Source of the DNA: Octopus sinensis
Taxonomy: Eukaryota
DNA: 64,000 bases
Direction: 5' to 3'
Assembly: GCF_006345805.1 (NCBI RefSeq)
Contig: NC_042998.1
Location: 2,108,001-2,172,000 of the forward strand
Under the pieces are notes generated by a model. That model saw only the letters and a program-made list of their open reading frames with translations, was not told the DNA's origin and did no database searches. This document shows, one piece after another, positions 603 through 23,225 of this stretch; the first letter of the stretch is position 1, and each line of letters opens with the position of its first letter. Both the position numbers and the translations under genes were made by a program.

Positions 603-859
603 CTAATTAAGAAATTGCCACATGATATTATTAACAATTTCTGGTCGGTCCAGTTGAACAAAATGTGTAGCATCTTCGATGTATTTTATCAAAAGATTAT
701 TAACATATTTACTACATTCTGCAGCCATTTCATGGTTGAGGAAGGCATCTTGCTTTCCCCAAATAATAAGTACTGGCATTTTCAGAATGTTTTTAGATAG
801 TTTTTCCTGTCTATTAAGAAAATTTGCTCTGTAATAGTTGATGGGTCCTGTGATTGCTC
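603..859 (-). CDS. EPHX4: Epoxide hydrolase 3/4-like, last coding exon
   Basis: Acceptor ttttcag at 861-860, phase 1. Encodes (G)AITGPINYYRAN...PVLIIWGKQDAFL...ATHFVQLDRPEIVNNIMWQFLN-stop, with the second lid Tyr (NYYR), acid Asp (WGxxD) and catalytic His. Confidence 0.93.
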
Positions 860-904
860 CTGAAAAGAAAAAGAACACAGATTTAGATTCATTAAGTCAC
901 TGAA

Positions 905-1141
905 GAAAAACCTTTAAATAATGACAATAAAGCATCATTGTTGGTGCCACATATAAGGCATCTGTGTTGGTGCCATATAAAAACCAGCCAGAACTCTCTG
1001 TAATTAGGAAGGGCATCCAGCCATAGAAACCATGCCAAAACAGACAATTGGAGCCTGGGAGCCTGGACAGTTCTTCGGATGGCCAGCTCCTTTCAAACTG
1101 TCCAACCCATGCCTGCATGAAAAATGGACATTAGAGGATGA
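905..1141 (+). mobile_element. Short RTE-3'-end-type repeat (family C), diverged
   Basis: TTAGGAAGGGCATCCAGC...TCCAACCCATGC...GGACATT-GATG, shared with copies at 27590, 28560 and 52300. Confidence 0.7.
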
Positions 1142-1713
1142 TTTTTACTATGAATATCATTTAGCAACCTTAAAAACTTTACCTGTTCAGCAAACTAAGA
1201 AGTGAGAATAGCTAATTGAATACTTACTTGTAAGTAAGTGCTAAGCATAACTCTAGTTTTAGTAAATTAACACAATATATGAGGGTAAAAGCTGTGCATC
1301 TATGTATAACTAATGAATCTAACGTAAGCTTATAAAACTTGGTGCAAGTACTAAAGAATGAGTCTTACTAATACCTGTTAAATATGGTCTAAGTTGCAGA
1401 AAATAATACTATAGCAATGACAAAGTTAAAAATAAATAAAAGTTATATAGTACTAGTGAATACATCAATTACTTGTAACATTGGCCTTTGTAACACCAGA
1501 TTTCTTAGCTAGCAGTTGACTAGATACATAAATACTTATTTCATGTAAAGGTCTGAAGAAAGTCAAATGACCAGATAAAATGTAGTTATAAGATTTTTAG
1601 TAAAGCTGGAGTCCTACATCCAAATAAATTTTGGGTGAAATAAAAAGGAAATAAAAAAAATTGAAAGATAATGTTTACAAATGAAAAGACTAAATTTTAT
1701 ATGAATACACATC

Positions 1714-1939
1714 TTAACCTTTTCATTACCAACCCGGCTGAAACTGGCTCTGGCTCTGAGTACAAATGTCTTGTTTCCATAAGTTTTGAATTAAAACCTT
1801 CCACCAAACTTTAGTCACAATTTATGTTCCTGACACTAGCTTAATGATAACTAAGTTATTTTACTAAATTTGTTATATTTAGAATTAATTGAAAGAAACA
1901 CAGAGCATCCCAAAATAAATACTGTAACGAAAGGGTTAA
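1714..1939 (+). mobile_element. piggyBac-like MITE, family 1
   Basis: TTAA-CCTTTTCATTAC ... GTAACGAAAGGG-TTAA termini; internal sequence shared with 17195-17420 and partial copy from 35737. Confidence 0.75.
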
Positions 1940-2071
1940 TCAATGTAAAGGTTTGATTTTAAAAATATATAAAATACCCAGAAAAGTTATCCTTTTAAAT
2001 CATGAAGATATCATTTATAAAAGCAACGGAAAAAAGTATCAGTCATAGAAGTATTAGAATAAAGTATTTTA

Positions 2072-2107
<36 letters not shown>

Positions 2108-2232
2108 TAATGTGAAAAAATTGAGTGAAATTAAAATCGAAAATTATGCATAAAAATGACTGCTATCATTATCTTTAGAATTCCATGTAGCTTTTCATAA
2201 TCCAGTCAAAATATTCTGACTGATTCGCTCAC

Positions 2233-2393
2233 CTGGCTGGGAAAATGCATATCTGTAAATGTCAATATCATCCTTTGTCATATTTTCACTTCTGACTCCA
2301 ACACGACTGGTGAAAACTCTAGAAAAAGCCTCAAATCTGTTGAGCGAGTACATCCATTCTGGGATATATGGCATTTGGAAGAAAAATATATAC
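2233..2393 (-). CDS. EPHX4: Epoxide hydrolase 3/4-like, coding exon 5
   Basis: ctacag acceptor, GTGAG donor. Encodes (W)YIFFFQMPYIPEWMYSLNRFEAFSRVF...DIDIYRYAFSQP(G), with the first lid Tyr; phases match both neighbours. Confidence 0.93.
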
Positions 2394-2588
2394 CTGTAGC
2401 AAAAGAGGGAGTGGGGTGTAATTAAGACCTTAATTAAAAATGACAATGTTGAATGCGTTGATATTTAATTCAATATTGAACAGCAAATGTATGTTACATT
2501 TAAACAAACTTTGGGTATCAAGAATTTATGAAAGAAAAAGTTGGGAGAACCAACTTTCTACTCTTTGTAACTACATTAGATATTTTGT

Positions 2589-3038
2589 TTAATCTTTTAG
2601 CATTTAAACCAGCCATATCTGGCCAAAATATTCCATCTGTTTTATGTTCAAACTGGCCTGATCTAACCTCTCACACCTACCCTACAATTCAACCAGTATT
2701 TACTCAATCATCTAAAATAATTTACAGCAAATCAATCGTAAATATCTATTATTTAAAATTAACACATTATCAAAGATTTATTTTAGCAAAATTAAATAAA
2801 ACAAATATAATAATAAATAATATTTAATTATTAATACAATGAAAACAACACTATATTTCTAAAACAACTGTAATATTAACAAGAATCATTAATAAACAAA
2901 AATATACAATAACATTCTAAAACTGGACAAGAGCATCATCAAAATCTCAAAGCTATGAGACAATACATGATTAATTCAAGACTATAAGAATAAAAAAGCT
3001 CTACATTTGGCAGAGTAACTAAAATGCTAAAGGGTTAA
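2589..3038 (-). mobile_element. piggyBac-like MITE, family 2, with an internal ~220-bp insertion
   Basis: TTAATCTTTTAGCATTT ... AAATGCTAAAGGGTTAA termini; both halves match the reverse complement of 50842-51069. Confidence 0.6.
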
Positions 3039-3394
3039 ATTGTAAGAAAATATTTTAGAGCAGCATTTCCCAAACATTTTACTCATGAGGAACCCCCAAG
3101 ACATTCTGTTTCATAGAATGATTAAATGTTTATTTCCTTTCTCTTAAATATCACAGAAGATTAAAAAAATCATAAAACTGACAGTAAAATGGTTGACAAT
3201 CCTAAATCTGGTGTCACAAAGAAAGTTTAAGGAATTCATCTTAACCAAGACCTTGTTTTGTCAGAACTTCCTGTTAAGAATTCATATTACCAGTAAAGCG
3301 GCCTTATTACTTATGGAGGCCAGGTTTCCCCTACCTTAGGGAATATACTGTGCAAGTGTAATGGTTTGATGAGAAGGGGCCAGTCAAGATCATT

Positions 3395-3560
3395 GGTCCT
3401 AATACTTGATCAGCATTTTATTTTATCAGCATCTGTAGGGTGAAAGATAAAGTTGACCTCAACAGGATTTGAACTCACAATGCAAAGATTTAGAACGAAT
3501 GGAGCAAAGCATTTAGTACAATTCTCCAGTGATTCTGCCACTTTGCCGTCTTTCTGTGCA
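3395..3560 (-). mobile_element. tRNA-headed SINE family B, diverged
   Basis: Reverse complement of GGCAGA..TTAG...GAGTTCAAAT...GAGGTCAACTTT-CTTTCA. Confidence 0.6.
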
Positions 3561-3739
3561 GGTATAATTAATTATGAATACAATATTAAACAAAAAAAAA
3601 TGACTCAAAAATGCATCTACATACAATTTGCCTACCTATATATATATCAGTATTTGTTGTGGAACCCATAGAAGCTCTTCCCAGGAACTCCATTTCGGAA
3701 AAGCTGCTTTGAAGTGAATAAAAAATGTGATATTCTTAC

Positions 3740-3908
3740 CATGATTTTCTAAGTTGAGAGAAATGGCTCCAAATATGCTTTGAAAAAACTGTTGGATGTG
3801 GGCAGTTCATAATGATTAATTTGGAAACCAAATGAGGATAATTAGCAGCTGTACTCCATGCTACTAGAGCTCCCCAATCATGGCCAACAAGCACACAATC
3901 TTTGTAAC
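3740..3908 (-). CDS. EPHX4: Epoxide hydrolase 3/4-like, coding exon 4 (nucleophile elbow); absent from the ORF track
   Basis: Manual translation: (G)YKDCVLVGHDWGALVAWSTAANYPHLVSKLIIMNCPHPTVFSKHIWSHFSQLRKS(W). GHDWG nucleophile motif; AG/GTAAG boundaries; phases 1 and 2 fit. Confidence 0.93.
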
Positions 3909-4949
3909 CTATAATAATAAATAAAAGATAACTTGTAGGTGTTTAATTTGCCCCATGAATATAAGAAATAATCTTATCAAGTGCAAATTGACACAATGTA
4001 ATGAGAAAATAATGAATTTTTAATAAATCAAAATTAAAATGAAAAGAACAAAAATCATTAGTGTCTTGTCAAGATAGGGAAGGGAGAGAACTTTGAAACT
4101 TAAATTCATTAAAAATTAAATGGGGATGTGTAATGAAAAGGTATCGAAAGGGTTAAGCATGTAATTGAATGCCTTCTAAAGATGACTGGTGTAGTTGTGT
4201 TCTGAATAAAATGTAGTTCATACACTATTACGGTATTCTGTTGACATAGAATGGGTGAATAGGTAATAAGTTTGCTTGTAAACATGAAGGCCCCCAGTTC
4301 AATCTCACTGCCAAGTATTTTGACAAGGTTCCTGTTACTAAATTACCTCAGCTCAACCCTAGCCTAATGAGTGAAACTGATTGGAGGGAAACTGTGAAGA
4401 AGCCCATCTTAGTAACTGTATTTCAAAAATACAGAGTTGTCACATACTGTGTCATGCTAATTCTTCCTGTTGATTATACAAATGGTACACATGTCTGTGG
4501 AATACTCAGCCACTTACATGCTTATTCAATGAGCAGGTAACTTAGTTGACTGATCAACTGAGTCTTCATTGTTAAAACTAATGGAGATACATCACCTCAC
4601 ATAATTTACATACTTTTACTGATACATAATATGCTTGTGAATGATAAAATATGGTGACAGTTTCAAGATTTGAACTCTGAAATGGTACTATCAGTAATAA
4701 CTACTGACCTATTCGCTTTATCTGAAAGTCTAAAATTACAAATCTAACTTTGAGCTGGGGTTGGAATGGAGTATAATTTCTAAAATATATTTTTCCAGGA
4801 GAACTTTGGTTGAAATGTAAAGTTGTTAGTGCATTTATTAACTGTTGAAATCTTAAAAAAAAAACAATCTTAATTTAAAGAATTATCTATACCATACTGA
4901 AAAATTTAATACAAGTAAATAAACATATTTAATTTAACTTAGATTGAAA

Positions 4950-6883
4950 TACCATAAATACTTGAGTAATAGTTGATCTCATGTAAAAGTTGACCCCCTA
5001 TTTTTGGCCAAAATATTGGGTATTTTTCATAGACCCCGTATAAAAGTTGATCCTAGTATTTCACAAACAACAGGACAACACTTGTGGGTCAATGTACCAT
5101 ATTATCCTGTATGTAGAAACAACACTGTTTCAAAATTGTGTGGCTACCTTACTGTAGCCTGCTCTATAGGTGGAATGCTTGGTGCTTATAGTAAAACACC
5201 ATTTAATAGCGAGCACTATACATCTGATGATGGGTGCTACATCACCATTACTAAAATGTATGCACAGGATATGCTGCAAGCCTGCACACATCTTCAAGCA
5301 CAATAAACACATGCATCATACATTCGTTTACATGGCGAGAAATGTGTTTTACAGACAGCATTACTGGCAAATGCCAGTCTGAATTCATACAAAGGCATGA
5401 CTTTGGTAAGCCTAAAAGCATTCAATTAATTGCTAGATCAGTGGTTTCCATGCAACCTTTATATTTTCCTCATCTCCAGATACAATAAAGACTTGTCTGT
5501 TTACATGATGAGAAACATATTTCACAGGCTGCACTATTGGCAAACAACAGCAAACACCACTGCAGGAATTCGTACGGAGGCATGACTTTGGTAAGCCTGA
5601 AAACATTTAGTTATTTGCTAGATCAATGGTTCCCAACTTTTTTTTTTTTTGCCACAGAATCCTTTGACATTATTTTTAAAAATGTGGAACCTCTGATAAC
5701 TTTCAAGGAATCCTGGGGTTTTGCAAAACACACTTTGGGAATCCCTGCTCCTGATTAACAACTCTACACTATAGTACAGACATTTACTGGTAACTGCACA
5801 CGACATCCTAAAACTTTTTTGGCAGAGTTCTGATCAAAGCATGCACTAAAACTCCTCATAACTTTATTTTTATGAATTTTCACAAAATTTATTTAAAAAA
5901 GATTTTTTTTTTGGATAATCTGAAAAAAAAAGTGCAGGAGTGGTTCAGTCCCACTGCATGGCACCTTGGGCAAGTGTCTTCTACTATAACCTCGGGCCAA
6001 TCAAAGCCTTGTGAGTGGATTTGGTAGACAGAAACTGAAAAAAACCCATCGTATATATGTATATATATGTGTGTGTGTGTGTGTGTTTGTGTGTCTGTGT
6101 TTGTCCCCTCCAACATTACTTGACAACCAATGCTGGTGTGTTTACGTCCCTATAACTTAGCAGTTTGGCAAAAGAGACCAATAGAATAAGTACTAGGCTT
6201 CCAAAGAATAAGTCCTGGGGTCGATTTGCTTGACTAAAGGCGGTGCACCAGCATGGCCACAAGTCACCTGACTGAAGCAAGTAAAAGAGTAATCATTAAT
6301 TCCATTACGCAGAAGACAGAATCAGAAAATATTTTGTGAAAATTCGTAAAAATAAAAAAAAAAAGTTATGAGGGGTTTTAGTACTTGCTTCAATCAGAAC
6401 TCTGCCCCTTTTTTTTCATCTCTGTTGGGAACAACATATACACATCCCACAACACACTGTTTACCCTATGATGTGAAACACGCCGAGTAGGTATCGGCTG
6501 TATGCACTATATTACGGTAGGCATGCTAGTACCAGGTAGAAATGCTACCAGTGGTAATATAACATGATTATGAGATATAAATTGATTTCACTCAGCTAAT
6601 CTGATAAGTTTGATGGATACAAATAAAAGAGAAAGTGTAAATATCTATAATAACTTTGAGGTCTTCTTTATGGGTTTTGCTATTTACTAGAATATGTGTT
6701 TTGATGCATAGAATTGGTAATATTACTGTAGATCAGTTGGGCTTTTGCTGCTGATACAGTACTTTGGATTCTAGCTTGAATTTCACCCCTTCAAAAGTAG
6801 TAACCATGTAATAGTCGATCCCATAAATTTGACCTTAAAAAAATGGTCTAAAAAATTCAACTTTTACATGAGTATATATGGCA
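4950..6883. mobile_element. Non-autonomous Tc1/pogo-like DNA transposon with nested insertions
   Basis: Left end TACCATAAATACTTGAGTAATAGTTGA vs reverse complement of right end TGCCATATATACTCATGTAAAAGTTGA (21/27 identical); subterminal AAGTTGACCC/TCGACC-type motifs. Confidence 0.6.
5932..6290 (+). mobile_element. tRNA-headed SINE family A, head partly deleted
   Basis: GGTTCAGTCCC B-box, GGATTTGGTAGAC-GAAACTGAAA core, internal (TA)n(TG)n, GACTGAA-CAAGTAAAAGAG tail. Confidence 0.9.
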
Positions 6884-7145
6884 ATCCTTTCAATTCTAGG
6901 CACAATTCCAGTAATTTGGTCAAAGGGTTAGTTGATTACATTGACTTCAGTAATTGATTGGTACTTATTTTATTAACCACGAAAGAATTAAAGGCAAAGT
7001 TGACTTCAGCAGAATTTGAACTCATAACATAGGGCAGAGAAATGCTGCTTTGCGTTTTGTCCATCTTGCTAATGATTCTGCCAGCTCACCATCTTAACTT
7101 AAATTGAAATAATAGCAAGAAAATTAGTCTTTAGCTGGAACCTAC

Positions 7146-7258
7146 CAAGTGTTTGAATAACTTCAGACACATCAGCAGACAGTTTTTCAAATGTGAAATC
7201 CTTCTTATCAGTAAATTTGGAAGAGAGTGAATATCCCCTTTGATCAAAAGCAACAACT
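7146..7258 (-). CDS. EPHX4: Epoxide hydrolase 3/4-like, coding exon 3; absent from the ORF track
   Basis: Manual translation: (R)VVAFDQRGYSLSSKFTDKKDFTFEKLSADVSEVIQTL(G), with the VVAxDxRGY motif; tttcag acceptor, GTAGG donor. Confidence 0.92.
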
Positions 7259-7349
7259 CTGAAATGGAAAGTCATATCAGTTGAGAAAATATTTAATATT
7301 CACTGAGTAAATCTAACAATATATTTACTTTATTGACCAGACTATTAGA

Positions 7350-7800
7350 CTATCACACAGTGCTTGTCACAATGCATTCTCCATTGTCTTTGAGTGGTCT
7401 GGATAGTTCCACCTGTTGTTTGTGAATCTTGCGACAATTTCCAGTCCAGTGAAGATTGTGCTTTTGTTATTCCATTGTCTCTTCATTCACTCCACTCTAT
7501 TCACAAATTACCTGGTTCCAGATATGCTCCTACAATGATATCCCCAATATGGATCTTTCTGTGGTCACCTGTATCATAGCCATCCACTGTTCCTTCTCCT
7601 GGGCAGTAGTCCATATCCCACTTGCATATAAAAGTGCAGGTAGAATGGTACAATTAAAGAGATAGCTACACAAGGTTTTGTCCAGATGTGCTTTGAACAC
7701 ATATTTAATCAGGGCAAATACCTTCCACTCTGCTCTTATCCTGAATGAGAGTTCAGCATTATTGTCTCAGCATAAATCTACTGCCAGTCCACCTTCACCT
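7350..7800 (-). mobile_element. RTE-clade LINE fragment, post-RT region
   Basis: Manual translation ELSFRIRAEWKVF...YLFNCTILPALLYASGIWTT...QVTTER resembles RTE 'EI.RRI.AGW.AF...LFN..VLP.L.YG.ETW'. Confidence 0.7.
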
Positions 7801-8039
7801 CCCCAATTTCATCTCTTCCCACCCACTGTGCCCTGCACATTTACTCTCATTGGCATTGAAAAGAAAGAGACAGAAAGATGCTATCATAAGCTGTGGAGGC
7901 TGTGGATAATGCATGAGAGAAAGAGAATCTTTCTAGAGTAATGCCAACAGAGATCTGTCATTCCAGTTGACAAAATCCTGATACAAAAAGCAATTAAGAA
8001 TATAAAGGAAGGAAAGGCTCTTGGTCATTCAGGAATACC

Positions 8040-8900
8040 AATGAGAATTGGGAAGACTTTCATTGTAGTGTCATCAATGTGTGGCAGGCATATGACAATG
8101 GCCAAGTATTCATCAGCCTGAGAAAGGCATTCTCAAGCTATCTTGCTCTGTGGTTTGGTGGTCACTGAGGTAGCTAGGAGTAGATGAATGGTTTGTAAGA
8201 GCCACACAAACAATGTATAGAGGTGGAATCAAGAAGATAACAGTCAACAATGGGTACAGCAATGAAATTTGTATACATGTAGGGATTCCTCAAGGCTCAA
8301 TTCTGAGTCCCTTTCAATTTATTATACACAGGACTTTCATATGAATTCACAGTGAGAATGCCTATATGCTGATGACCCAGTTCTTACAGCTAAAACAGTA
8401 GTTGAATGAGAGAGAAGATACTAGAAGTGGAGGCAAAACCTAGAATCATGAGGCCTTGTCCTTGCTTGATATACAGAAAGGATATAGCTAACAATTCCTT
8501 AGAGTGAGGACTTTATAAACTGTGAATATACAAGAGATATAGTGGAATTGCAGGCAGGCTTACAGAGAAAACAGACTTTGTGTGAAGCAGATGCACTGAA
8601 GTAATAAACAGTAAAAGAAGACAGGAAAATGTTCTTCTTCAATGTGGGATGGTTTCCTAGAAAATAGTTAATTGCTTCTGTTATCAAGGTAATCTAATAA
8701 GCATATTAACGGATGTTCCAAAGGGTATAACAGTGATGGTAAGAATGTGCTAGAGAATGTTCAGGGAGCTTTTATCTCTGTTGGTGTCGTAAAGGATATC
8801 TCTCTCAAAGTGAAAAGTAGTTTGTATGATACATGGGTATGAACTGCAAGGCTGTATGGCAGTGAGACAGAGACCTTAAATGTTGAGGATTTGTAAATTG
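8040..8900 (+). mobile_element. RTE-clade LINE reverse-transcriptase fragment, degenerate
   Basis: GGGATTCCTCAAGGCTCAATTCTGAGTCCC (G.PQGS.LSP), CTATATGCTGATGAC (LYADD), then a ...SLKVKSSLYD...LYGSET-like segment; many stops. Confidence 0.7.
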
Positions 8901-9668
8901 ATAATTATTTACATACAATAAGTTGAGACAACTTGTTGTATGCTAGCTGTTGACGAAAGTGTAGTAAAAAAAAGACATTAACTGATAACACCATTGTCCC
9001 TACACTAGAGAGAGACAAAAATAATAAGAAAAATAGCCAGGAATGTCAACAGCATAAAAGAAGAAACTGTGTCAACAGTAAGCATGCCTAAAGAACTTTT
9101 TCTGATTTTGCTATGCATTACACATTCAAACTGGTTTGGTTTTTTTATTGGTAGTTCATACTTTATAGCTTTCAACATTAAACTTGTTTAGAAAAATTTA
9201 CAAACTTGTGGTAGGCTAGGCTGTTTGGGGTACAGAGATCCCTTTTTTTCCATACAATGACAAGCTCTATTTCATTGCAAGACACTTTGGGACAACCAAC
9301 GATCTCTGAGTGTGAAATTGGTAGATGGAAGCTGTATGGAAGCCTCTGTGTGTGTGTGTGTATATAATTAACATCTTTATAAATGTAAATAAAGACACAC
9401 AAAAAGCATTGGGCAGAAAACACAAGGATTCCTTGCAAATTGTCCTGCAGCTTGATACTTTGAAAGACAAGTGGAATAAAAATTGTAATACATGAAAAAC
9501 AAGTAAAGATTAAAAACAGGAAGGACATCTGGATGTAAAACAATATCTCAATATGTATTTGTCAAACCATTATAAGCTTGAAAAACAGAAGTAAAAATGA
9601 ACGAACAAATGATAACATGAAAACTGAGAAAATATAAAACTTTTCGAGGGAGAAATTTATTAGTTCAA

Positions 9669-10494
9669 ATCTTTTCTAAAAGATGGACAGAATTTTCTAG
9701 TTAACTAAACAATTTGAAACTTCGTATACTGGTAGAATGTGTCAAAGGAAAACATTAAAATTTCAACTAGATTTTTTGAGAAAATTGTATTTTGTAACTT
9801 TTACGTAGTTTAATTCTTCGAATTTTAACCAATTTGACCTAAATCCATTTGCTGCGTCTAAGTAAAAACACACACATACACACACGCACACGTGCTATTC
9901 ACCCATCACTCCTGTCTTCTGCAGGTGCTAGAAATAACAGCTATATCTCTTAAATAGATGGATTTCGTCGCCCAATAAAAATATTAACGATATTTTTGGA
10001 CTTTTAAAACATGTTCCTATTCGTTCCGCTTTCGCAGGACATCTAGAAAATTCTGTCCATCTTTTAGAAAAGATCCGAAATAACAAGACAATGCGTGGAA
10101 ACCGCAAAAAAAATTGATGTCCTGCGAAAGCGGAACGAATAGGAACATGTTTTAAAAGTCCAAAAATATCGTTTATATTTTTATTGGGCGACGAAATTCA
10201 TCGATTTAAGAGATATAGCTGTTATTTCTAGCACCTGCAGAAGACAGGAGTGATGGGTGAATAGCACGTGTGCGTGTGTGTGTGTGTGGTGTGCTGTTTA
10301 CTTAGACGCAGCAAATGGATTTAGGTCAAATTTGTTAAAATTCGAAGAATTAAACTACGTAAAAGTTACAAAATACAATTTTCTCAAAAAATCTAGTTGA
10401 AATTAATGTTTTCTTTTGACACATTCTACCAGTATACGAAGTTTCAAATTGTTTAGTTAACTAGAAAATTCTGTCCATCTTTTAGAAAAGATCC
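9669..10494. repeat. Long inverted repeat: arms 9669-10043 and 10116-10492, 72-nt spacer
   Basis: Arms are near-identical reverse complements; the 34-mer CTAGAAAATTCTGTCCATCTTTTAGAAAAGATCC occurs as a direct repeat at 10043-10076 and 10461-10494. Confidence 0.95.
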
Positions 10495-10631
10495 TAAAAT
10501 ATATACAAAATGGTATATAAGTATAATGAAATTTTAATTTCTATTTTTTATCAGCAAAAATGTGAAACAAATCTGATGATGTTTTTAAATTAAGATTTTA
10601 TAATTACAGGTGAAGTAAGCCAGAGTCTTAC

Positions 10632-10731
10632 CTGTAATTTTTACTGAACTCAACTATTTGATAGCGCCAGGAATACCAACCATGAAGCGCACAATAATAA
10701 CTTGTAAACACCCCAAAGTTACTAAATAAAA
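10632..10731 (-). CDS. EPHX4: Epoxide hydrolase 3/4-like, coding exon 2; 3' half clear, 5' boundary uncertain or damaged
   Basis: Encodes ...LHGWYSWRYQIVEFSKNY(R) with a GTAAG donor at 10631, matching EPHX4-type WYSWRYQ. The expected FPEF is missing and no phase-0 in-frame AG was found. Confidence 0.65.
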
Positions 10732-10973
10732 CTAAAAATCGGTTGGAGACTTAGCAGGAGCCAGTAGAGTAAATAGCAGAAAAAAAAAGGAGAGGGAGGG
10801 CTCACGAGAATTTCGCAAAACATCAGATGATTTCTCCTCGGGCACCAACAAGCCTCACGTTTTAGTTTTTATTCAAATTTCAATGAACATATGATATTGT
10901 CTAAATCGTATTTTCTAATATACACAATAAAGCAGCGTATCAGGAGTTGTTCAAAAGTAAAAGTGTAACTTAC

Positions 10974-11189
10974 ACTGAGTGACAGAAACCCGTGGGTCCC
11001 GAGTTCTTCATCATTCCATTGAGGTGGAGGAGCTTTAAAGATTGGACCCCGCCTGAAGTTGAATACGCCGAAAATACTGAACGGGTTTATGATGAAAGAT
11101 AGAATCAGTCTCCCTATCGCAAAACACGTATAAAAGAAGGTTAAAAAATGAGTAATGACAACCCAGGATATTTCATAAATAATCGACAT
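10974..11189 (-). CDS. EPHX4: Epoxide hydrolase 3/4-like, first coding exon (signal anchor plus PP..W.D..LGTH motif)
   Basis: MSIIYEISWVVITHFLTFFYTCFAIGRLILSFIINPFSIFG...KAPPPQWNDEELGTHGFLSLS then GTAAGT; resembles EPHX4 'HPPACLSDPSLGTH'. Confidence 0.85.
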
Positions 11190-12855: not shown

Positions 12856-13522
12856 TGGGGAGGGGGGACTCACAGCCTCATCGGCGTTTGGTAATTCCTT
12901 ATGTGAAGAAAATCCTGCTGAAATAAACGATCTTTTTCTATTTCACAGTTTGTTTGTTAAAACTATTTTAATATAAATATTTTTCGAAATAGACGCGAGG
13001 AAGGGTTAGAACTTCATGCTGGGTGTTAGAAGTTGTCTCCCTTCACCTGAATTTTAACTTTTTGTCGTTGTAATGTAGTAAACATTACACATGGCAACTT
13101 TGACCACATTTTCCAGTATGCGACTTTATGCTAGATAGAATTTTTTTCCATTGGAGGCGAAGCAGTCTTGTTATCAAGATGTGGTTGAGGACTGAAGAGA
13201 ATTTGGTCTAAGAGTAGGTTTTATGACAGTGTGTGCAACCGCTGGCTGGAGATATGTTGTCACACAAAAACTCCATGAGGAGTGAAGGGAACTAGGATTG
13301 AAACCACTGCTCAGAGTCGCAAATTTCTGACAATGGCAAGAATTGTGTTCCCTTGAAAATGACTATATTGACCCATCATACCTATTAAAGCACTGAGTTG
13401 AGCCTAATTGGTATAAATGTATTCATTTCATTAAAAAAAATGTTTACTGAAAAGCAAGGAAGATCAGTCTCATGTGCTTATATTTAATTTCAGTTTAACT
13501 CACCATGGCACACACCAGCAAG

Positions 13523-13915
13523 TGGGAGTGGTTGTGTGGTAAGTAGCTTGCTCACAAACCACATAGTTCCAGGTTCAGTCCCACTGCGTGGCACCTTGGG
13601 CAAGTATCTTCTACTATAACCTTGGACTGACCAAAGCCTTGAGAATGGATTTGGTAGACGGAAACTGAAAGAAGCCCATCATATATATGTATATATATGT
13701 ATATATGTGTGTGTATGTTTGTGTGTCTGTATTCGTCCCCCCCAACAACCGATGCTGGTATGTTTACGTCCCTGTAACTTAGCGGTTCGGCAAAAGAGAC
13801 CGATAGAATAAGTACTCGGCTTACAAAGAATAAATCCTGGGGTCAATTATATCGATCGACTAAAGGCGGTGCTCCAGCATGGCCACAGTCAAATGACTGA
13901 AACAAGTAAAAGAGT
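13523..13915 (+). mobile_element. SINE family A, full length
   Basis: Same head, core and tail motifs as other family A copies. Confidence 0.92.
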
Positions 13916-14398
13916 ATATAAGAATAGAAGTTTGGCCTAGTTTCAGATGAGTAAAGAGGTCTCTGCCCCAGAGGAAGTGAACCAATGCTGAAACATCGGG
14001 TCTGGGAGTCTGCTGATGTCTCTTGGATCACGGCTTTTGTTTTATTTTCACTTTTTTTTTATTTGACACAAATTATATGTAGAGAGATTCTGCTCCAAGA
14101 TGAAATCTCACAGCTGGTATCTTTCACATTCTGGTGTATAAGAACATTTTAAAATTAAATGTACACCTCTTCATTTCAACCCTCACTACTTCATAAGTTT
14201 ATGCTACATTAATTCTAACATGGCAAAATCTTATAGGTAATGTGGAATTCCATTACATAGACATATATTTTTCAGTGGTTTCCCTGTTCTAAATTGAGAT
14301 ACTTTCTCATGAAATTTTTTCCAAATAAATAATTAATCAATAAACAACAACTTTTATGCCTGAAAATATCACCTTTTAAATATGTGCAGTACAGTCGT

Positions 14399-14780: not shown

Positions 14781-15229
14781 CCAGAAATACAATAGGGTAT
14801 AAATAAGAATGCAGTAATACCATACAATGATACTTACTCTTTACAAACAATGTTCACTTCTGCATGAAAAGTGGTGGTGCAATGGGAGTTTCTAGGAGGA
14901 ATAGGAATGTCATATTCTATTCTTACATCGATATTAGTATCTGTTGTTGGTATGAAGAACTTCTTTAAAGTTGTTTCATGTTTACAATACACCATCTCTT
15001 TTTGTGCAGCTCAGTGTTAGAACTGAACTCATTATGATCTCTTGAAGTAATTTTTTGTTATGTTTGTGGTTAGGATTGCTGTTAGCAAAGACTTGAAGAC
15101 CCTTTTTTTATATATATAAGTACATCCTCTTTGCAGTCAAATGATGTTTAGTGAGTAAAACCTTTATATCTTTATCTTACCCCGTAGATCACTTTGTTCT
15201 AACATCATCAACTTCTTATTAGACAAACT

Positions 15230-15950: not shown

Positions 15951-16496
15951 ATTTTCACCTGTCACATCAGGATATTTGTATACAAACTACCTTGATTTTT
16001 CACAAAAAAATATATAGTTTTCTTTGATTTTGTCTTAGTCTGACTTAGGAGCATTGAGTCAAAGTATGAAAAATGCTTAATTATCACTCTTCCCTTGCTT
16101 AAAGTATAGTAAAATTATGAATATTGCTGGTTTTATGCATAGATAGTTTAACTGTAGTAAGATTTTAGGCCAGATATGTTTTTTTTTTTTGCCTATGATA
16201 GATAAAATACAAAAGGTGGCCTAAAGTTGGTTCTTTCTATTGATACAGAATATTAAACACAACAAACTCTGCAAATTATATGCGAAAAAAAACCCCCACA
16301 TAAAATGAAGGAAGAAACCTCTGTTTCTTATACTTCCTTGAATGTTTTAGCAGTGGCCAATCCCTTTTTATACTCCAACAAGGCCCGAAATTTTTGGGGA
16401 AGGAGCTAGTCAATTAGATTGACCCCAGTATGCAACTGGTACTTAATTTATCGACGGCAGAATTTGAACTCAGAATGTAAAGACAGACAAAATACT

Positions 16497-16902
16497 CTTT
16501 ACTCTTTTACTTGTTTCAGTCATGTGACTGTGGCTATGCTGGAGCACTGCTTTTAGTCGAGCAAATCAACCCCAGGAGTTATTCTTTGTAAGCCTAGTAC
16601 TTATTCTATCAGTCTCTTTTGCCAAACCACTAAGTTACAGTGACGTAAACACACCAGCATCAGTTGTCAAGCGATGTTGGATGGGACAAACACAGACACA
16701 CAAACATATACACACACATACATATATATATATACATACATATATATGACAGGCTTCTTTCAGTTTCCGTCTACCAAATCCACTCACAAGGCTTTGATCA
16801 GCCCGAGGCTATAGTAGAAGATACTTGCCCAAGATGCCACGCAGTGGGACTGAACCTGGAACCATGTGGTTCGTAAGCAAGCTACTTACCACACAGCCAC
16901 TC
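16497..16902 (-). mobile_element. SINE family A nested inside a family B SINE (host parts ~16420-16495 and 16903-16955)
   Basis: Family B sequence resumes on both sides of the family A copy. Confidence 0.85.
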
Positions 16903-16969
16903 CTTGCTAAGCATTTCGCCCGGCGTGCTAATGTGTCTGCCAGCTTGCCACCTTAATCAGTTATCATAT

Positions 16970-20366: not shown

Positions 20367-20527
20367 GCACAGGAGTGGCTGTGTGGTAAGTAGCTTGCTA
20401 ACCAACCACATGGTTCCGGGTTCAGTCCCACTGCGTGGCACCTTGGGCAAGTGTCTTCTGCTATAGCCCCGGGCTGACCAAAGCCATGTGAGTGGATTTG
20501 GTAGACGGAAACTGAAAGAAGCCTGTC

Positions 20528-20573
<46 letters not shown>

Positions 20574-20770
20574 TTGTCCCCCTAGCATTGCTTGACAACC
20601 GATGCTGGTGTGTTTACGTCCCCGTCACTTAGCGGTTCGGCAAAAGAGACCGATAGAATAAGTACTGGGCTTACAAAGAATAAGTCCCGGGGTCGATTTG
20701 CTCGACTAAAGGCGGTGCTCCAGCATGGCCGCAGTTAAATGACTGAATCAAGTAAAAGAGTAAAAGAGAT
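20367..20770 (+). mobile_element. SINE family A, full length
   Basis: Head-to-tail match to the family motifs. Confidence 0.92.
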
Positions 20771-22941: not shown

Positions 22942-23022
22942 ATGGCTTCGCAATTACACTTCGGCCTCCTGACAACCGTCACCTGCTTCTTTACCTTGGT
23001 GGTCCTCTCTCATTCAAGAAAG
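22942..23022 (+). CDS. GLMP: Glycosylated lysosomal membrane protein (NCU-G1), exon 1, signal peptide; absent from the ORF track in this frame
   Basis: MASQLHFGLLTTVTCFFTLVVLSHSRK then AAG|GTACAG, phase 0 as exon 2 requires; RK|IS parallels human RQ|VS. Confidence 0.75.
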
Positions 23023-23061
23023 GTACAGTTTCTATGTGTCTGTTTTTGTGTGTGTGTGTGA

Positions 23062-23098
<37 letters not shown>

Positions 23099-23225
23099 TA
23101 TATACACATTACATGTTTATTTACGTTGTTGTTTTATCCCTGCTCAATCCCTGTCAGAGAGACTTATAGCGAAAGACATTCCAACCATGACAATCCCGTC
23201 ATTTTTTTTCCAAGTATGATGTTTG

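What the first reader, a model, noticed from the sequence alone, without database searches (positions are those of the whole stretch)
10632..10976. Epoxide hydrolase with an intact catalytic triad but no HGxP oxyanion loop and a phase conflict at exon 2
Seen: five exons are clean and keep GHDWG, both lid tyrosines, the WGxxD acid and the catalytic His. Exon 2 reads ...CALHGWYSWRYQ where EPHX3/4 orthologues read ...LLHGFPEFWYSWRYQ, so four residues are missing. The canonical GTAAGT donor of exon 1 is phase 0, but every nearby AG is phase 1 or 2 for the WYSW frame. Using the overlapping donor GTGTAA two nt upstream (10975) with the AG at 10733-10732 restores one continuous ORF (..GFLSL-ILFSNFGVFTSYYCALHGWYSW..). 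Fragments resembling the expected exon sit in mixed frames (FYLVTLG / KLLLC / LHG, and NVRL / EEK / LMFC ..TTCTC|GTGAG near 10800-10860). Established: HGxP forms the oxyanion hole of alpha/beta-fold epoxide hydrolases. Inference: a recent loss-of-function allele, a catalytically altered protein rescued by a shifted donor, or a local consensus error.
Basis: partly seen in the sequence, partly recalled or inferred. Interest (0 to 1): 0.7.

Follow-up and report, generated by a model that had tools for sequence, protein, structure and literature searches.

The report
Octopus epoxide hydrolase gene broken by deletion
In the Octopus sinensis reference genome, one of two neighbouring EPHX4-like epoxide hydrolase genes has lost about 405 bases covering a splice site and the start of exon 2, so it is most likely a young, ordinary loss-of-function copy backed up by an intact paralogue.

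Summary
The window is Octopus sinensis assembly GCA_006345805.1, chromosome CM016860.1. It matches that record at 100% over 24,995 bp. The gene on the minus strand (603-11189) is the EPHX4-like paralogue B, RefSeq XP_029658550.1.

Syntenic orthologues in O. vulgaris and O. bimaculoides show a derived deletion in O. sinensis. The 405 bp lost are 329 bp of the intron 1 3' end (polypyrimidine tract and acceptor included) plus the first 76 nt of the 125-nt exon 2. They are replaced by 3 bp at 10681-10683.

Twenty-six codons are lost (NAKVHYVCKGDKNKPLMLFIHGFPEC). They encode strands beta2 and beta3 and the HGFP oxyanion loop. Most or all of "CALHG" is intron-derived. The "exon-like fragments" are conserved intron sequence and resemble the exon no more than shuffled sequence does.

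Every product from the canonical donor stops at 72-97 aa. The other exons are clean and show no excess of amino-acid changes, so the lesion is recent, polymorphic, or less likely an assembly artefact. An intact paralogue A lies about 27 kb away. This is an ordinary finding of low interest.

The parts
10974..11189 (-). Exon 1 of EPHX4-like paralogue B (Met to ...GTHGFLSLS). It encodes the N-terminal membrane-anchor helix and strand beta1, and is intact.
   Evidence: It is 97% identical at nucleotide level to O. vulgaris and O. bimaculoides exon 1 with no gaps. The helix at residues 3-34 and strand at 65-70 are seen in the AF2 model of paralogue A.
10968..10973 (-). Canonical exon 1 donor GTAAGT, phase 0.
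10684..10973 (-). Retained 5' 290 nt of intron 1.
   Evidence: It is collinear with the 5' part of intron 1 in O. vulgaris (L003 18192-18479) and O. bimaculoides (L004 10217-10499). It resembles exon 2 no more than shuffled sequence does.
10681..10683 (-). Deletion junction. Three bases (ATG on the minus strand) stand in place of 405 bp present in O. vulgaris (L003 18480-18884).
   Evidence: Both deleted flanks are shared by O. bimaculoides.
10632..10680 (-). Surviving 3' 49 nt of exon 2: the last two bases of the Cys codon, then WYSWRYQIVEFSKNY, then AG. The GTAAGA donor follows at 10631.
   Evidence: 100% identical to O. vulgaris L003 18885-18933.
7146..7258 (-). Exon 3 (RVVAFDQRGY...TLG), intact.
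3740..3908 (-). Exon 4, with the nucleophile elbow GHDWG; intact.
2233..2393 (-). Exon 5, carrying the first lid tyrosine (the Y of KSWY; the W codon is split between exons 4 and 5); intact.
603..859 (-). Exon 6, with the second lid Tyr (NYY), the acid WGKQD, the catalytic His (DATH) and the stop codon; intact.
14838..14995 (-). Non-conserved upstream coding exon used by RefSeq model XP_029658550.1. It has a GTAAGT donor and is spliced to the cryptic AG at 10702-10701.
   Evidence: Joining 14995-14838, 10700-10632 and exons 3-6 reproduces P0002 exactly. There is no match in the 10 kb upstream of the O. bimaculoides gene. AF2 pLDDT is below 62 for this N-terminus.

Best explanation
The window carries the Octopus sinensis copy of EPHX4-like paralogue B. 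This gene sits between GLMP and a glyoxalase-domain gene.

On the O. sinensis lineage, after its split from O. vulgaris, a single deletion of about 405 bp occurred. It has 1-3 bp of junction filler, as expected for end-joining repair. It removed the last 329 bp of intron 1 (a TA/TG microsatellite, (TTTA)n, the polypyrimidine tract and the AG acceptor) and the first 76 nt of exon 2.

The lost 26 codons (NAKVHYVCKGDKNKPLMLFIHGFPEC) encode strands beta2 and beta3 of the alpha/beta-hydrolase sheet. They also encode the HGFP loop, whose Phe backbone NH is half of the oxyanion hole.

The true acceptor is gone, so the strong phase-0 donor of exon 1 can only reach cryptic AGs in former intron sequence, or skip to exon 3. 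Every such product is frameshifted and ends after 72-97 residues. The allele is therefore a null, that is, a young unprocessed pseudogene or a segregating loss-of-function allele. The loss is tolerable because the intact inverted paralogue A (XP_029658165.1, 346 aa) lies about 27 kb away.

Shown: the deletion in the assembly, its polarity, the phase table, the truncated products, the intact paralogue and the invariance of HG-P. Inferred: that the deletion exists in the animal and is not an assembly artefact, the end-joining origin, actual splicing and NMD, and functional redundancy with paralogue A.
For: - Identity of the window: window 1-24995 is 100% identical to O. sinensis CM016860.1.
- Orthology: the synteny GLMP / EPHX4-B / glyoxalase gene is shared by O. 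sinensis, O. vulgaris and O. bimaculoides.
- Intact orthologues: O. vulgaris and O. bimaculoides have a 125-nt exon 2 reading NAKVHYVCKGDKNKPLMLFIHGFPECWYSWRYQ.
- The deletion: the window aligns to O. vulgaris up to 10684 and again from 10680, with 405 bp (L003 18480-18884) missing in between.
- Polarity: O. bimaculoides shares sequence inside both ends of the missing segment, so the O. sinensis state is derived.
- Not displaced: the unique parts of the missing segment occur nowhere else in the window or in 9.4 kb beyond it. The only other O. sinensis match is exon 2 of paralogue A.
- Consequences: phase table; truncated products of 72-97 aa and 76 aa for exon 2 skipping.
- Conservation: H, G and P are invariant and F and E nearly invariant across 63 homologues.
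- Structure: the HGFP Phe aligns with Phe34 of 5ng7/CH65-EH, whose backbone N forms the oxyanion hole together with Trp102 (PMC6198070). The AF2 model of the intact paralogue places beta2 at 75-81, beta3 at 88-92 and HGFP at 93-96.
- Local assembly quality: the remaining 916 nt of CDS align gap-free with both other species. The breakpoints lie in unique sequence, not inside the microsatellite.
- Back-up copy: intact paralogue A is on the same chromosome at 2,052,258-2,081,063.
Against: - There is no independent O. sinensis evidence. Only one assembly exists in the collections, and no Octopus transcript-derived proteins for this gene were found. The deletion could be an assembly artefact or heterozygous.
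- The other exons show no decay on the O. sinensis branch: 4 synonymous changes, 0 clearly derived and at most 3 ambiguous non-synonymous changes, and no stops or frameshifts. That fits a very recent lesion. It fits equally well a gene that is in fact intact in the animal, or one still under selection.
- RefSeq annotates a 308-aa coding model through the locus.
- The junction can also be parsed as a larger deletion plus a separate 12-nt loss.
Confidence: 0.72

Rival explanations
1. Assembly artefact or one-haplotype artefact. The animal has a normal exon 2, and the PacBio-based consensus dropped about 400 bp around a TA/TG and TTTA low-complexity tract.
For: - The missing segment contains a microsatellite and a (TTTA)n run.
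- The O. sinensis assembly is the most fragmented of the chromosome-scale octopus assemblies: 20,491 contigs and 86% of sequence in chromosome-scale scaffolds (PMC10700109).
- All other exons look fully constrained, as expected if the gene is really intact.
Against: - The breakpoints lie in unique sequence, about 215 bp upstream and 80 bp downstream of the repeats, not inside them.
- There are no N runs in the window.
- The surrounding 25 kb aligns to O. vulgaris at about 97% identity, and 916 nt of CDS carries no indel.
- One other roughly 400-bp difference nearby, at window 12958-12969, is explained by presence or absence of a SINE-like repeat.
- The 1-3 bp of filler at the junction looks like a repair scar.
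Confidence: 0.2
2. A remodelled protein is made and used. It would come either from the shifted donor (337 or 343 aa) or from the upstream RefSeq exon (308 aa). It would be an alpha/beta-hydrolase lacking beta2, beta3 and the HGXP loop, acting as a pseudoenzyme or an enzyme with altered chemistry.
For: - Open reading frames exist for these splice choices.
- No excess of amino-acid changes is seen in exons 1 and 3-6 on the O. sinensis branch.
- AF2 threads the intron-derived YYCAL as a surrogate beta3 and keeps the rest of the fold confident.
Against: - The shifted donor TCA|GTGTAA is weak and sits 2 nt from a perfect GTAAGT.
- The RefSeq 5' exon is not conserved in O. bimaculoides and is predicted to be disordered, with pLDDT of 42-62.
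- H, G and P of the motif are invariant and F and E nearly so in 63 homologues, and all are kept in O. vulgaris, O. bimaculoides and Argonauta.
- The oxyanion-hole Phe and the cis-Pro that follows it are missing.
- The branch is only about 2.5 My long, so clean exons carry little weight. Even with all 3 ambiguous changes counted on this branch, 3 of 7 non-synonymous changes against a neutral expectation of about 75% gives a binomial P of about 0.07.
Confidence: 0.06
3. One reading: an old, decaying exon 2 with a 12-nt in-frame loss (FPEF) plus frameshifts, whose relics lie in mixed frames upstream.
For: The junction can be parsed so that ATGGTT derives from the original CAT GGT TT, followed by a separate 12-nt loss.
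Against: - The supposed relics are orthologous intron 1 sequence in species that have a perfect exon 2 further downstream.
- They score at shuffle level against the exon.
- The upstream 20 or more codons and the acceptor are simply absent.
Confidence: 0.01

Closest known systems
Vertebrate EPHX4 / EPHX3 (ABHD7 / ABHD9), membrane-anchored alpha/beta-fold epoxide hydrolases
   Same: - About 40-43% identity to vertebrate EPHX4/EPHX3 proteins.
- N-terminal anchor helix followed by an alpha/beta-hydrolase domain with a lid (PMC7792612).
- The Asp-His-Asp triad, two lid tyrosines and the WYSWRYQ helix are all kept.
   Different: The O. sinensis B copy lacks beta2, beta3 and the HGFP oxyanion loop, and has no in-frame canonical splice path from exon 1. 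The substrates of EPHX4 are themselves unknown (PMC7792612).
Syntenic orthologues: O. vulgaris CAI9718854.1 locus and O. bimaculoides XP_052832120.1
   Same: - Same position between GLMP and the glyoxalase-domain gene, and the same six-exon structure.
- Exon nucleotide identity of 95-100% to O. vulgaris and 93-100% to O. bimaculoides, with no gaps.
   Different: Both have the complete 125-nt exon 2 and its acceptor. O. sinensis lacks 405 bp there.
Paralogue A in the same genome (O. sinensis XP_029658165.1)
   Same: - About 82% protein identity.
- Same chromosome, about 27 kb away.
- In O. bimaculoides the two copies are in inverted orientation around the glyoxalase-domain gene.
   Different: Paralogue A is intact at 346 aa, with NVNVHYVSIGDKNKPLMLFVHGFPECWYSW.
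CH65-EH (PDB 5ng7), closest solved structure
   Same: E-value 6e-63 against the O. bimaculoides B orthologue (P0121). All catalytic residues align one-to-one (PMC6198070).
   Different: It is a soluble enzyme from a hot-spring metagenome with no membrane anchor. It was used here only as a structural yardstick.

Membership tests
Alpha/beta-fold epoxide hydrolase (EPHX3/4-like) | Alpha/beta-hydrolase fold domain | tested here: met
   The 337-aa reader model matches PF00561 at E = 4.6e-28, but the match starts only at profile position 11. The closest PDB hits are epoxide hydrolases.
Alpha/beta-fold epoxide hydrolase (EPHX3/4-like) | Nucleophile Asp in the elbow GHDWG, with the following Trp NH forming half of the oxyanion hole | tested here: met
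   Exon 4 reads LVGHDWGA and aligns to Asp101-Trp102 of 5ng7.
Alpha/beta-fold epoxide hydrolase (EPHX3/4-like) | His-Asp charge relay (WGxxD acid and catalytic His) | tested here: met
   WGKQD and DATH in exon 6 align to Asp241 and His270 of 5ng7.
Alpha/beta-fold epoxide hydrolase (EPHX3/4-like) | Two ring-opening lid tyrosines | tested here: met
   KSWY (exons 4/5) and NYY (exon 6) align to Tyr148 and Tyr209 of 5ng7.
Alpha/beta-fold epoxide hydrolase (EPHX3/4-like) | HGXP motif, where the backbone NH of X is the other half of the oxyanion hole and is followed by a cis-Pro | tested here: not met
   The coding sequence for ...LFIHGFPEC is deleted. The assembly reads HGWY with no X-Pro. H, G and P are invariant in 63 homologues.
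Alpha/beta-fold epoxide hydrolase (EPHX3/4-like) | Complete central beta-sheet (beta1-beta8) | tested here: not met
   Beta2 (residues 75-81) and beta3 (88-92) of the intact paralogue model fall within the deleted codons. The model of the RefSeq product has no beta1 or beta2 and only a low-confidence surrogate beta3.
Alpha/beta-fold epoxide hydrolase (EPHX3/4-like) | Continuous ORF through canonical splice sites | tested here: not met
   The canonical phase-0 donor has no stop-free phase-0 acceptor, and products end at 72-97 aa.
Unprocessed (unitary-type) pseudogene or loss-of-function allele of a duplicated gene | Syntenic position with intact orthologues, and retained intron-exon structure | tested here: met
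Unprocessed (unitary-type) pseudogene or loss-of-function allele of a duplicated gene | A derived disabling lesion | tested here: met
   A 405-bp deletion of the acceptor and 26 codons, polarised by O. bimaculoides.
Unprocessed (unitary-type) pseudogene or loss-of-function allele of a duplicated gene | Relaxed constraint elsewhere in the gene | tested here: inconclusive
   The O. sinensis branch has 4 synonymous and 0-3 non-synonymous changes, with no stops. There are too few changes to decide. The pattern is compatible with a very young lesion.
Unprocessed (unitary-type) pseudogene or loss-of-function allele of a duplicated gene | Lesion present in independent reads or individuals; transcripts absent or aberrant | not testable with these tools
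   There is no read-level or O. sinensis transcript data. No Octopus transcript-derived proteins for this gene appeared in the protein collection.

The most novel reading that the evidence does not exclude
O. sinensis expresses a remodelled EPHX4-like protein from the upstream RefSeq exon or from the shifted exon 1 donor. The protein keeps the Asp-His-Asp triad and lid tyrosines but has an intron-derived strand in place of beta2, beta3 and the HGXP loop. It would be a naturally occurring HGXP-less epoxide hydrolase or pseudoenzyme, less than about 2.5 My old and kept by selection.
Probability: 0.05. Interest if true: 0.45.

Novelty: new member of a known kind. Interest (0 to 1): 0.15.

Why it matters
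The biological weight is small. This is a routine example of one duplicate being disabled by a small deletion while its neighbour stays intact.

It matters mainly for annotation. RefSeq XP_029658550.1 is a forced model: it skips the conserved first exon and reads intron sequence as coding. It should be flagged as a probable pseudogene or low-quality locus. Anyone using O. sinensis as the reference for O. vulgaris work should know that the two differ here.

If the deletion is confirmed in reads, it gives a dated (under about 2.5 My) loss event in the little-studied EPHX3/4 family.

Tried and rejected
- **Exon relic hypothesis.** I tested the retained intron stretch against the missing 78 nt (26 codons) of exon 2, using nucleotide and three-frame protein local alignment against 1000 shuffles. 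There was no signal, and the stretch is orthologous intron in the two other species. Rejected.
- **Displaced exon piece.** I blasted the 405-bp O. vulgaris segment against the window, the 9.4 kb beyond it and the paralogue A locus. Only microsatellite hits and paralogue A's own exon 2 were found.
- **A second EPHX copy in the window.** tblastn found only the one gene.
- **Independent transcripts or reads.** The 5.8-billion-protein search and the cluster listings returned no Logan or transcriptome-derived Octopus proteins for paralogue A or B. ORFs across the junction are shorter than 30 aa, so an exact-protein look-up could not be used. I ran no further search on this.
- **dN/dS as a test of pseudogene age.** There are too few substitutions for a decision.
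- **Structure prediction of the RefSeq product.** It is informative about which elements are lost but cannot show whether the protein folds.
- **The O. sinensis assembly paper (Li et al. 2020).** It is not in the searchable library.

Full report
**What the window is**

Window 1-24995 is 100% identical, without gaps, to the locus fetched for RefSeq protein XP_029658550.1. That locus is Octopus sinensis assembly GCA_006345805.1, chromosome CM016860.1. From the reported ranges I infer that the window is CM016860.1:2,108,001-2,172,000. The window contains no N runs.

**The gene**

One EPHX4-like gene lies on the minus strand, and tblastn finds no second copy in the 64 kb. Its exons are:

| Exon | Window coordinates | State |
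|---|---|---|
| e1 | 11189-10974 | clean |
| "e2" | ...-10632 | truncated |
| e3 | 7258-7146 | clean |
| e4 | 3908-3740 | clean |
| e5 | 2393-2233 | clean |
| e6 | 859-603 | clean |

Exons 3-6 have clean GT-AG boundaries, and their phases join correctly. The spliced model matches Pfam Abhydrolase_1. Its best solved relative is the epoxide hydrolase CH65-EH, PDB 5ng7.

Through that alignment, and the residue numbers given in PMC6198070, the catalytic residues are all present:
- nucleophile Asp, in GHDWG;
- both ring-opening tyrosines, in KSWY and NYY;
- the acid, in WGKQD;
- the catalytic His, in DATH.

**Checking the phase conflict**

- The GTAAGT donor at 10973 is phase 0.
- Between it and the WYSW codons, the only phase-0 AG (10902) is followed by five in-frame stops.
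- The four stop-free AGs need one base (10751, 10733) or two bases (10723, 10702) from the upstream exon.

These observations are also correct.

**What is really there**

The protein search showed that Octopus has two paralogues:
- Paralogue A lies next to eIF3J. Examples are O. bimaculoides XP_014768714.1 and O. sinensis XP_029658165.1, both 346 aa.
- Paralogue B lies between GLMP and a glyoxalase-domain gene.

The window gene is B. The same GLMP / B / glyoxalase synteny holds for O. sinensis, O. vulgaris (CAI9718854.1 locus) and O. bimaculoides (XP_052832120.1, 346 aa).

Both orthologues have a normal 125-nt exon 2 encoding NAKVHYVCKGDKNKPLMLFIHGFPECWYSWRYQIVEFSKNY(R).

Aligning the loci gives the answer. 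The window is collinear with O. vulgaris up to 10684 and again from 10680. In between, the window has 3 bp where O. vulgaris has 405 bp, L003 18480-18884. That segment consists of:
- the last 329 bp of intron 1, with a TA/TG microsatellite, (TTTA)n, the polypyrimidine tract and the AG acceptor;
- the first 76 nt of exon 2.

O. bimaculoides shares sequence inside both ends of the segment. The O. sinensis state is therefore a derived deletion, not an insertion in O. vulgaris.

The unique parts of the segment occur nowhere else in the window or in the adjoining 9.4 kb. The only other O. sinensis match is paralogue A's own exon 2.

**The junction**

The junction reads GCGCTTC-ATG-GTTGGTATTCC. The simplest parse is one deletion with 1-3 nt of filler. 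An alternative parse keeps ATGGTT from the original CAT GGT TT and adds a separate 12-nt loss. The two cannot be distinguished, and the choice does not matter for the conclusion. In both parses the acceptor and at least 20 upstream codons are gone, and "CAL" plus the first base of the His codon is intron sequence.

**The "exon-like fragments"**

The strings NVRL/EEK/LMFC and FYLVTLG/KLLLC lie in the retained 5' 290 nt of intron 1. That stretch is about 97.6% identical to O. vulgaris intron 1 and about 88-90% identical to O. bimaculoides intron 1, in each case upstream of a perfect exon 2. Against the missing exon piece it scores at shuffle level: nucleotide local score 10 against 9.8 +/- 1.6, and best-frame protein score 19 against 21.6 +/- 3.4. 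The fragments are chance resemblances.

**Consequences**

In the AF2 model of the intact paralogue (pLDDT 93.6):
- beta1 is at residues 65-70, encoded by exon 1;
- beta2 is at 75-81, beta3 at 88-92 and HGFP at 93-96, all within the deleted codons;
- helix alphaA starts at WYSW.

[quoted passage not shown] Phe34 aligns with the deleted Phe. H, G and P of the motif are invariant, and F and E nearly invariant, in 63 homologues from molluscs, rotifers, nematodes, vertebrates and cyanobacteria.

Splice products:
- From the canonical donor, cryptic acceptors give products of 72, 77, 88 or 97 aa.
- Skipping exon 2 gives 76 aa.
- ORF-preserving routes exist only through the weak shifted donor, or through the non-conserved upstream exon used by RefSeq.

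I reproduced XP_029658550.1 exactly as 14995-14838 + 10700-10632 + exons 3-6. That model skips the conserved exon 1 and reads former intron as coding. Its first 52 residues and the junction are of low confidence in AF2, and there is no beta1 or beta2.

**Age and reality of the lesion**

With O. bimaculoides as outgroup, the O. sinensis branch carries 4 synonymous changes, no unambiguous non-synonymous change and at most 3 ambiguous ones. There are no stops or frameshifts in 963 aligned coding bases.

O. sinensis and O. vulgaris split about 2.5 My ago (PMC10700109). The clean exons say that the lesion is recent, or polymorphic, or absent from the animal.

Arguments against an assembly artefact:
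- The breakpoints are in unique sequence, away from the microsatellite.
- The junction looks like a repair scar.
- The neighbouring CDS has no indels.
- One other roughly 400-bp difference nearby, at window 12958-12969, is presence or absence of a SINE-like element.

No reads or second assembly were available, so I put the artefact or haplotype option at about 0.2.

**Comparison with what is known**

The gene belongs by descent to the EPHX3/EPHX4 group of membrane-anchored alpha/beta-fold epoxide hydrolases (PMC7792612). The copy in this assembly fails two defining features, the HGXP loop and a complete sheet, and has no canonical in-frame splice path. I therefore file it as a disabled member, not as a variant enzyme.

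**Verdict**

This is an ordinary, probably very young loss-of-function deletion in one of two neighbouring paralogues. Its main practical consequence is a misleading RefSeq model. Interest is low.

Noticed in passing
window 56439-62342: A degenerate (ATA)n microsatellite of about 5.9 kb (1972 copies, 78% matches). It explains the 8-15% GC and the strong skews in the composition profile.
   Followed up: partly
window 13525-13923, 16495-16907, 20367-20768, 25095-25485, 34188-34556 and others; orthologous site window 12958-12969 vs L003 15795-16202: A SINE-like repeat family of about 380 bp has more than 15 copies in the window. One copy present in O. vulgaris is absent at the orthologous O. sinensis site, so it is a presence/absence difference between the two species.
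   Followed up: partly
L003 (O. vulgaris) exon 4 25748-25916 and exon 6 28790-29046: The O. vulgaris paralogue B differs from O. sinensis B in two tight clusters: codons 168-172 (giving KYLR) and codons 257-268. Every change is identical to paralogue A, while O. bimaculoides B agrees with O. sinensis at all but two of these codons (257 and 264). This looks like A-to-B gene conversion in O. vulgaris. It was compared only with O. bimaculoides A, not with O. vulgaris A DNA.
   Followed up: partly
L003 17976-18191 and L003 10001-10045; proteins P0123, P0128: The O. vulgaris annotation also skips the conserved, intact exon 1 of paralogue B in favour of low-complexity upstream exons (CAI9718854.1). 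CAI9718856.1 fuses eIF3J to paralogue A in a 530-aa model. Both look like annotation artefacts.
   Followed up: no
O. sinensis CM016860.1 about 2.05-2.12 Mb (L005, L002); O. bimaculoides L001/L004: Paralogues A and B lie on either side of a glyoxalase-domain gene, with eIF3J beyond A and GLMP beyond B. In O. bimaculoides they are in inverted orientation around it. All three Octopus species carry both copies, and the GLMP / B / glyoxalase side was checked in all three; the A side was checked only in O. bimaculoides. This points to an old inverted duplication.
   Followed up: partly
window about 22942-24995 and beyond, + strand: The 3' part of a GLMP-domain gene (PF15065; 386-aa product) lies upstream of the hydrolase gene. 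The rest of the window (25-64 kb) was not annotated here.
   Followed up: no
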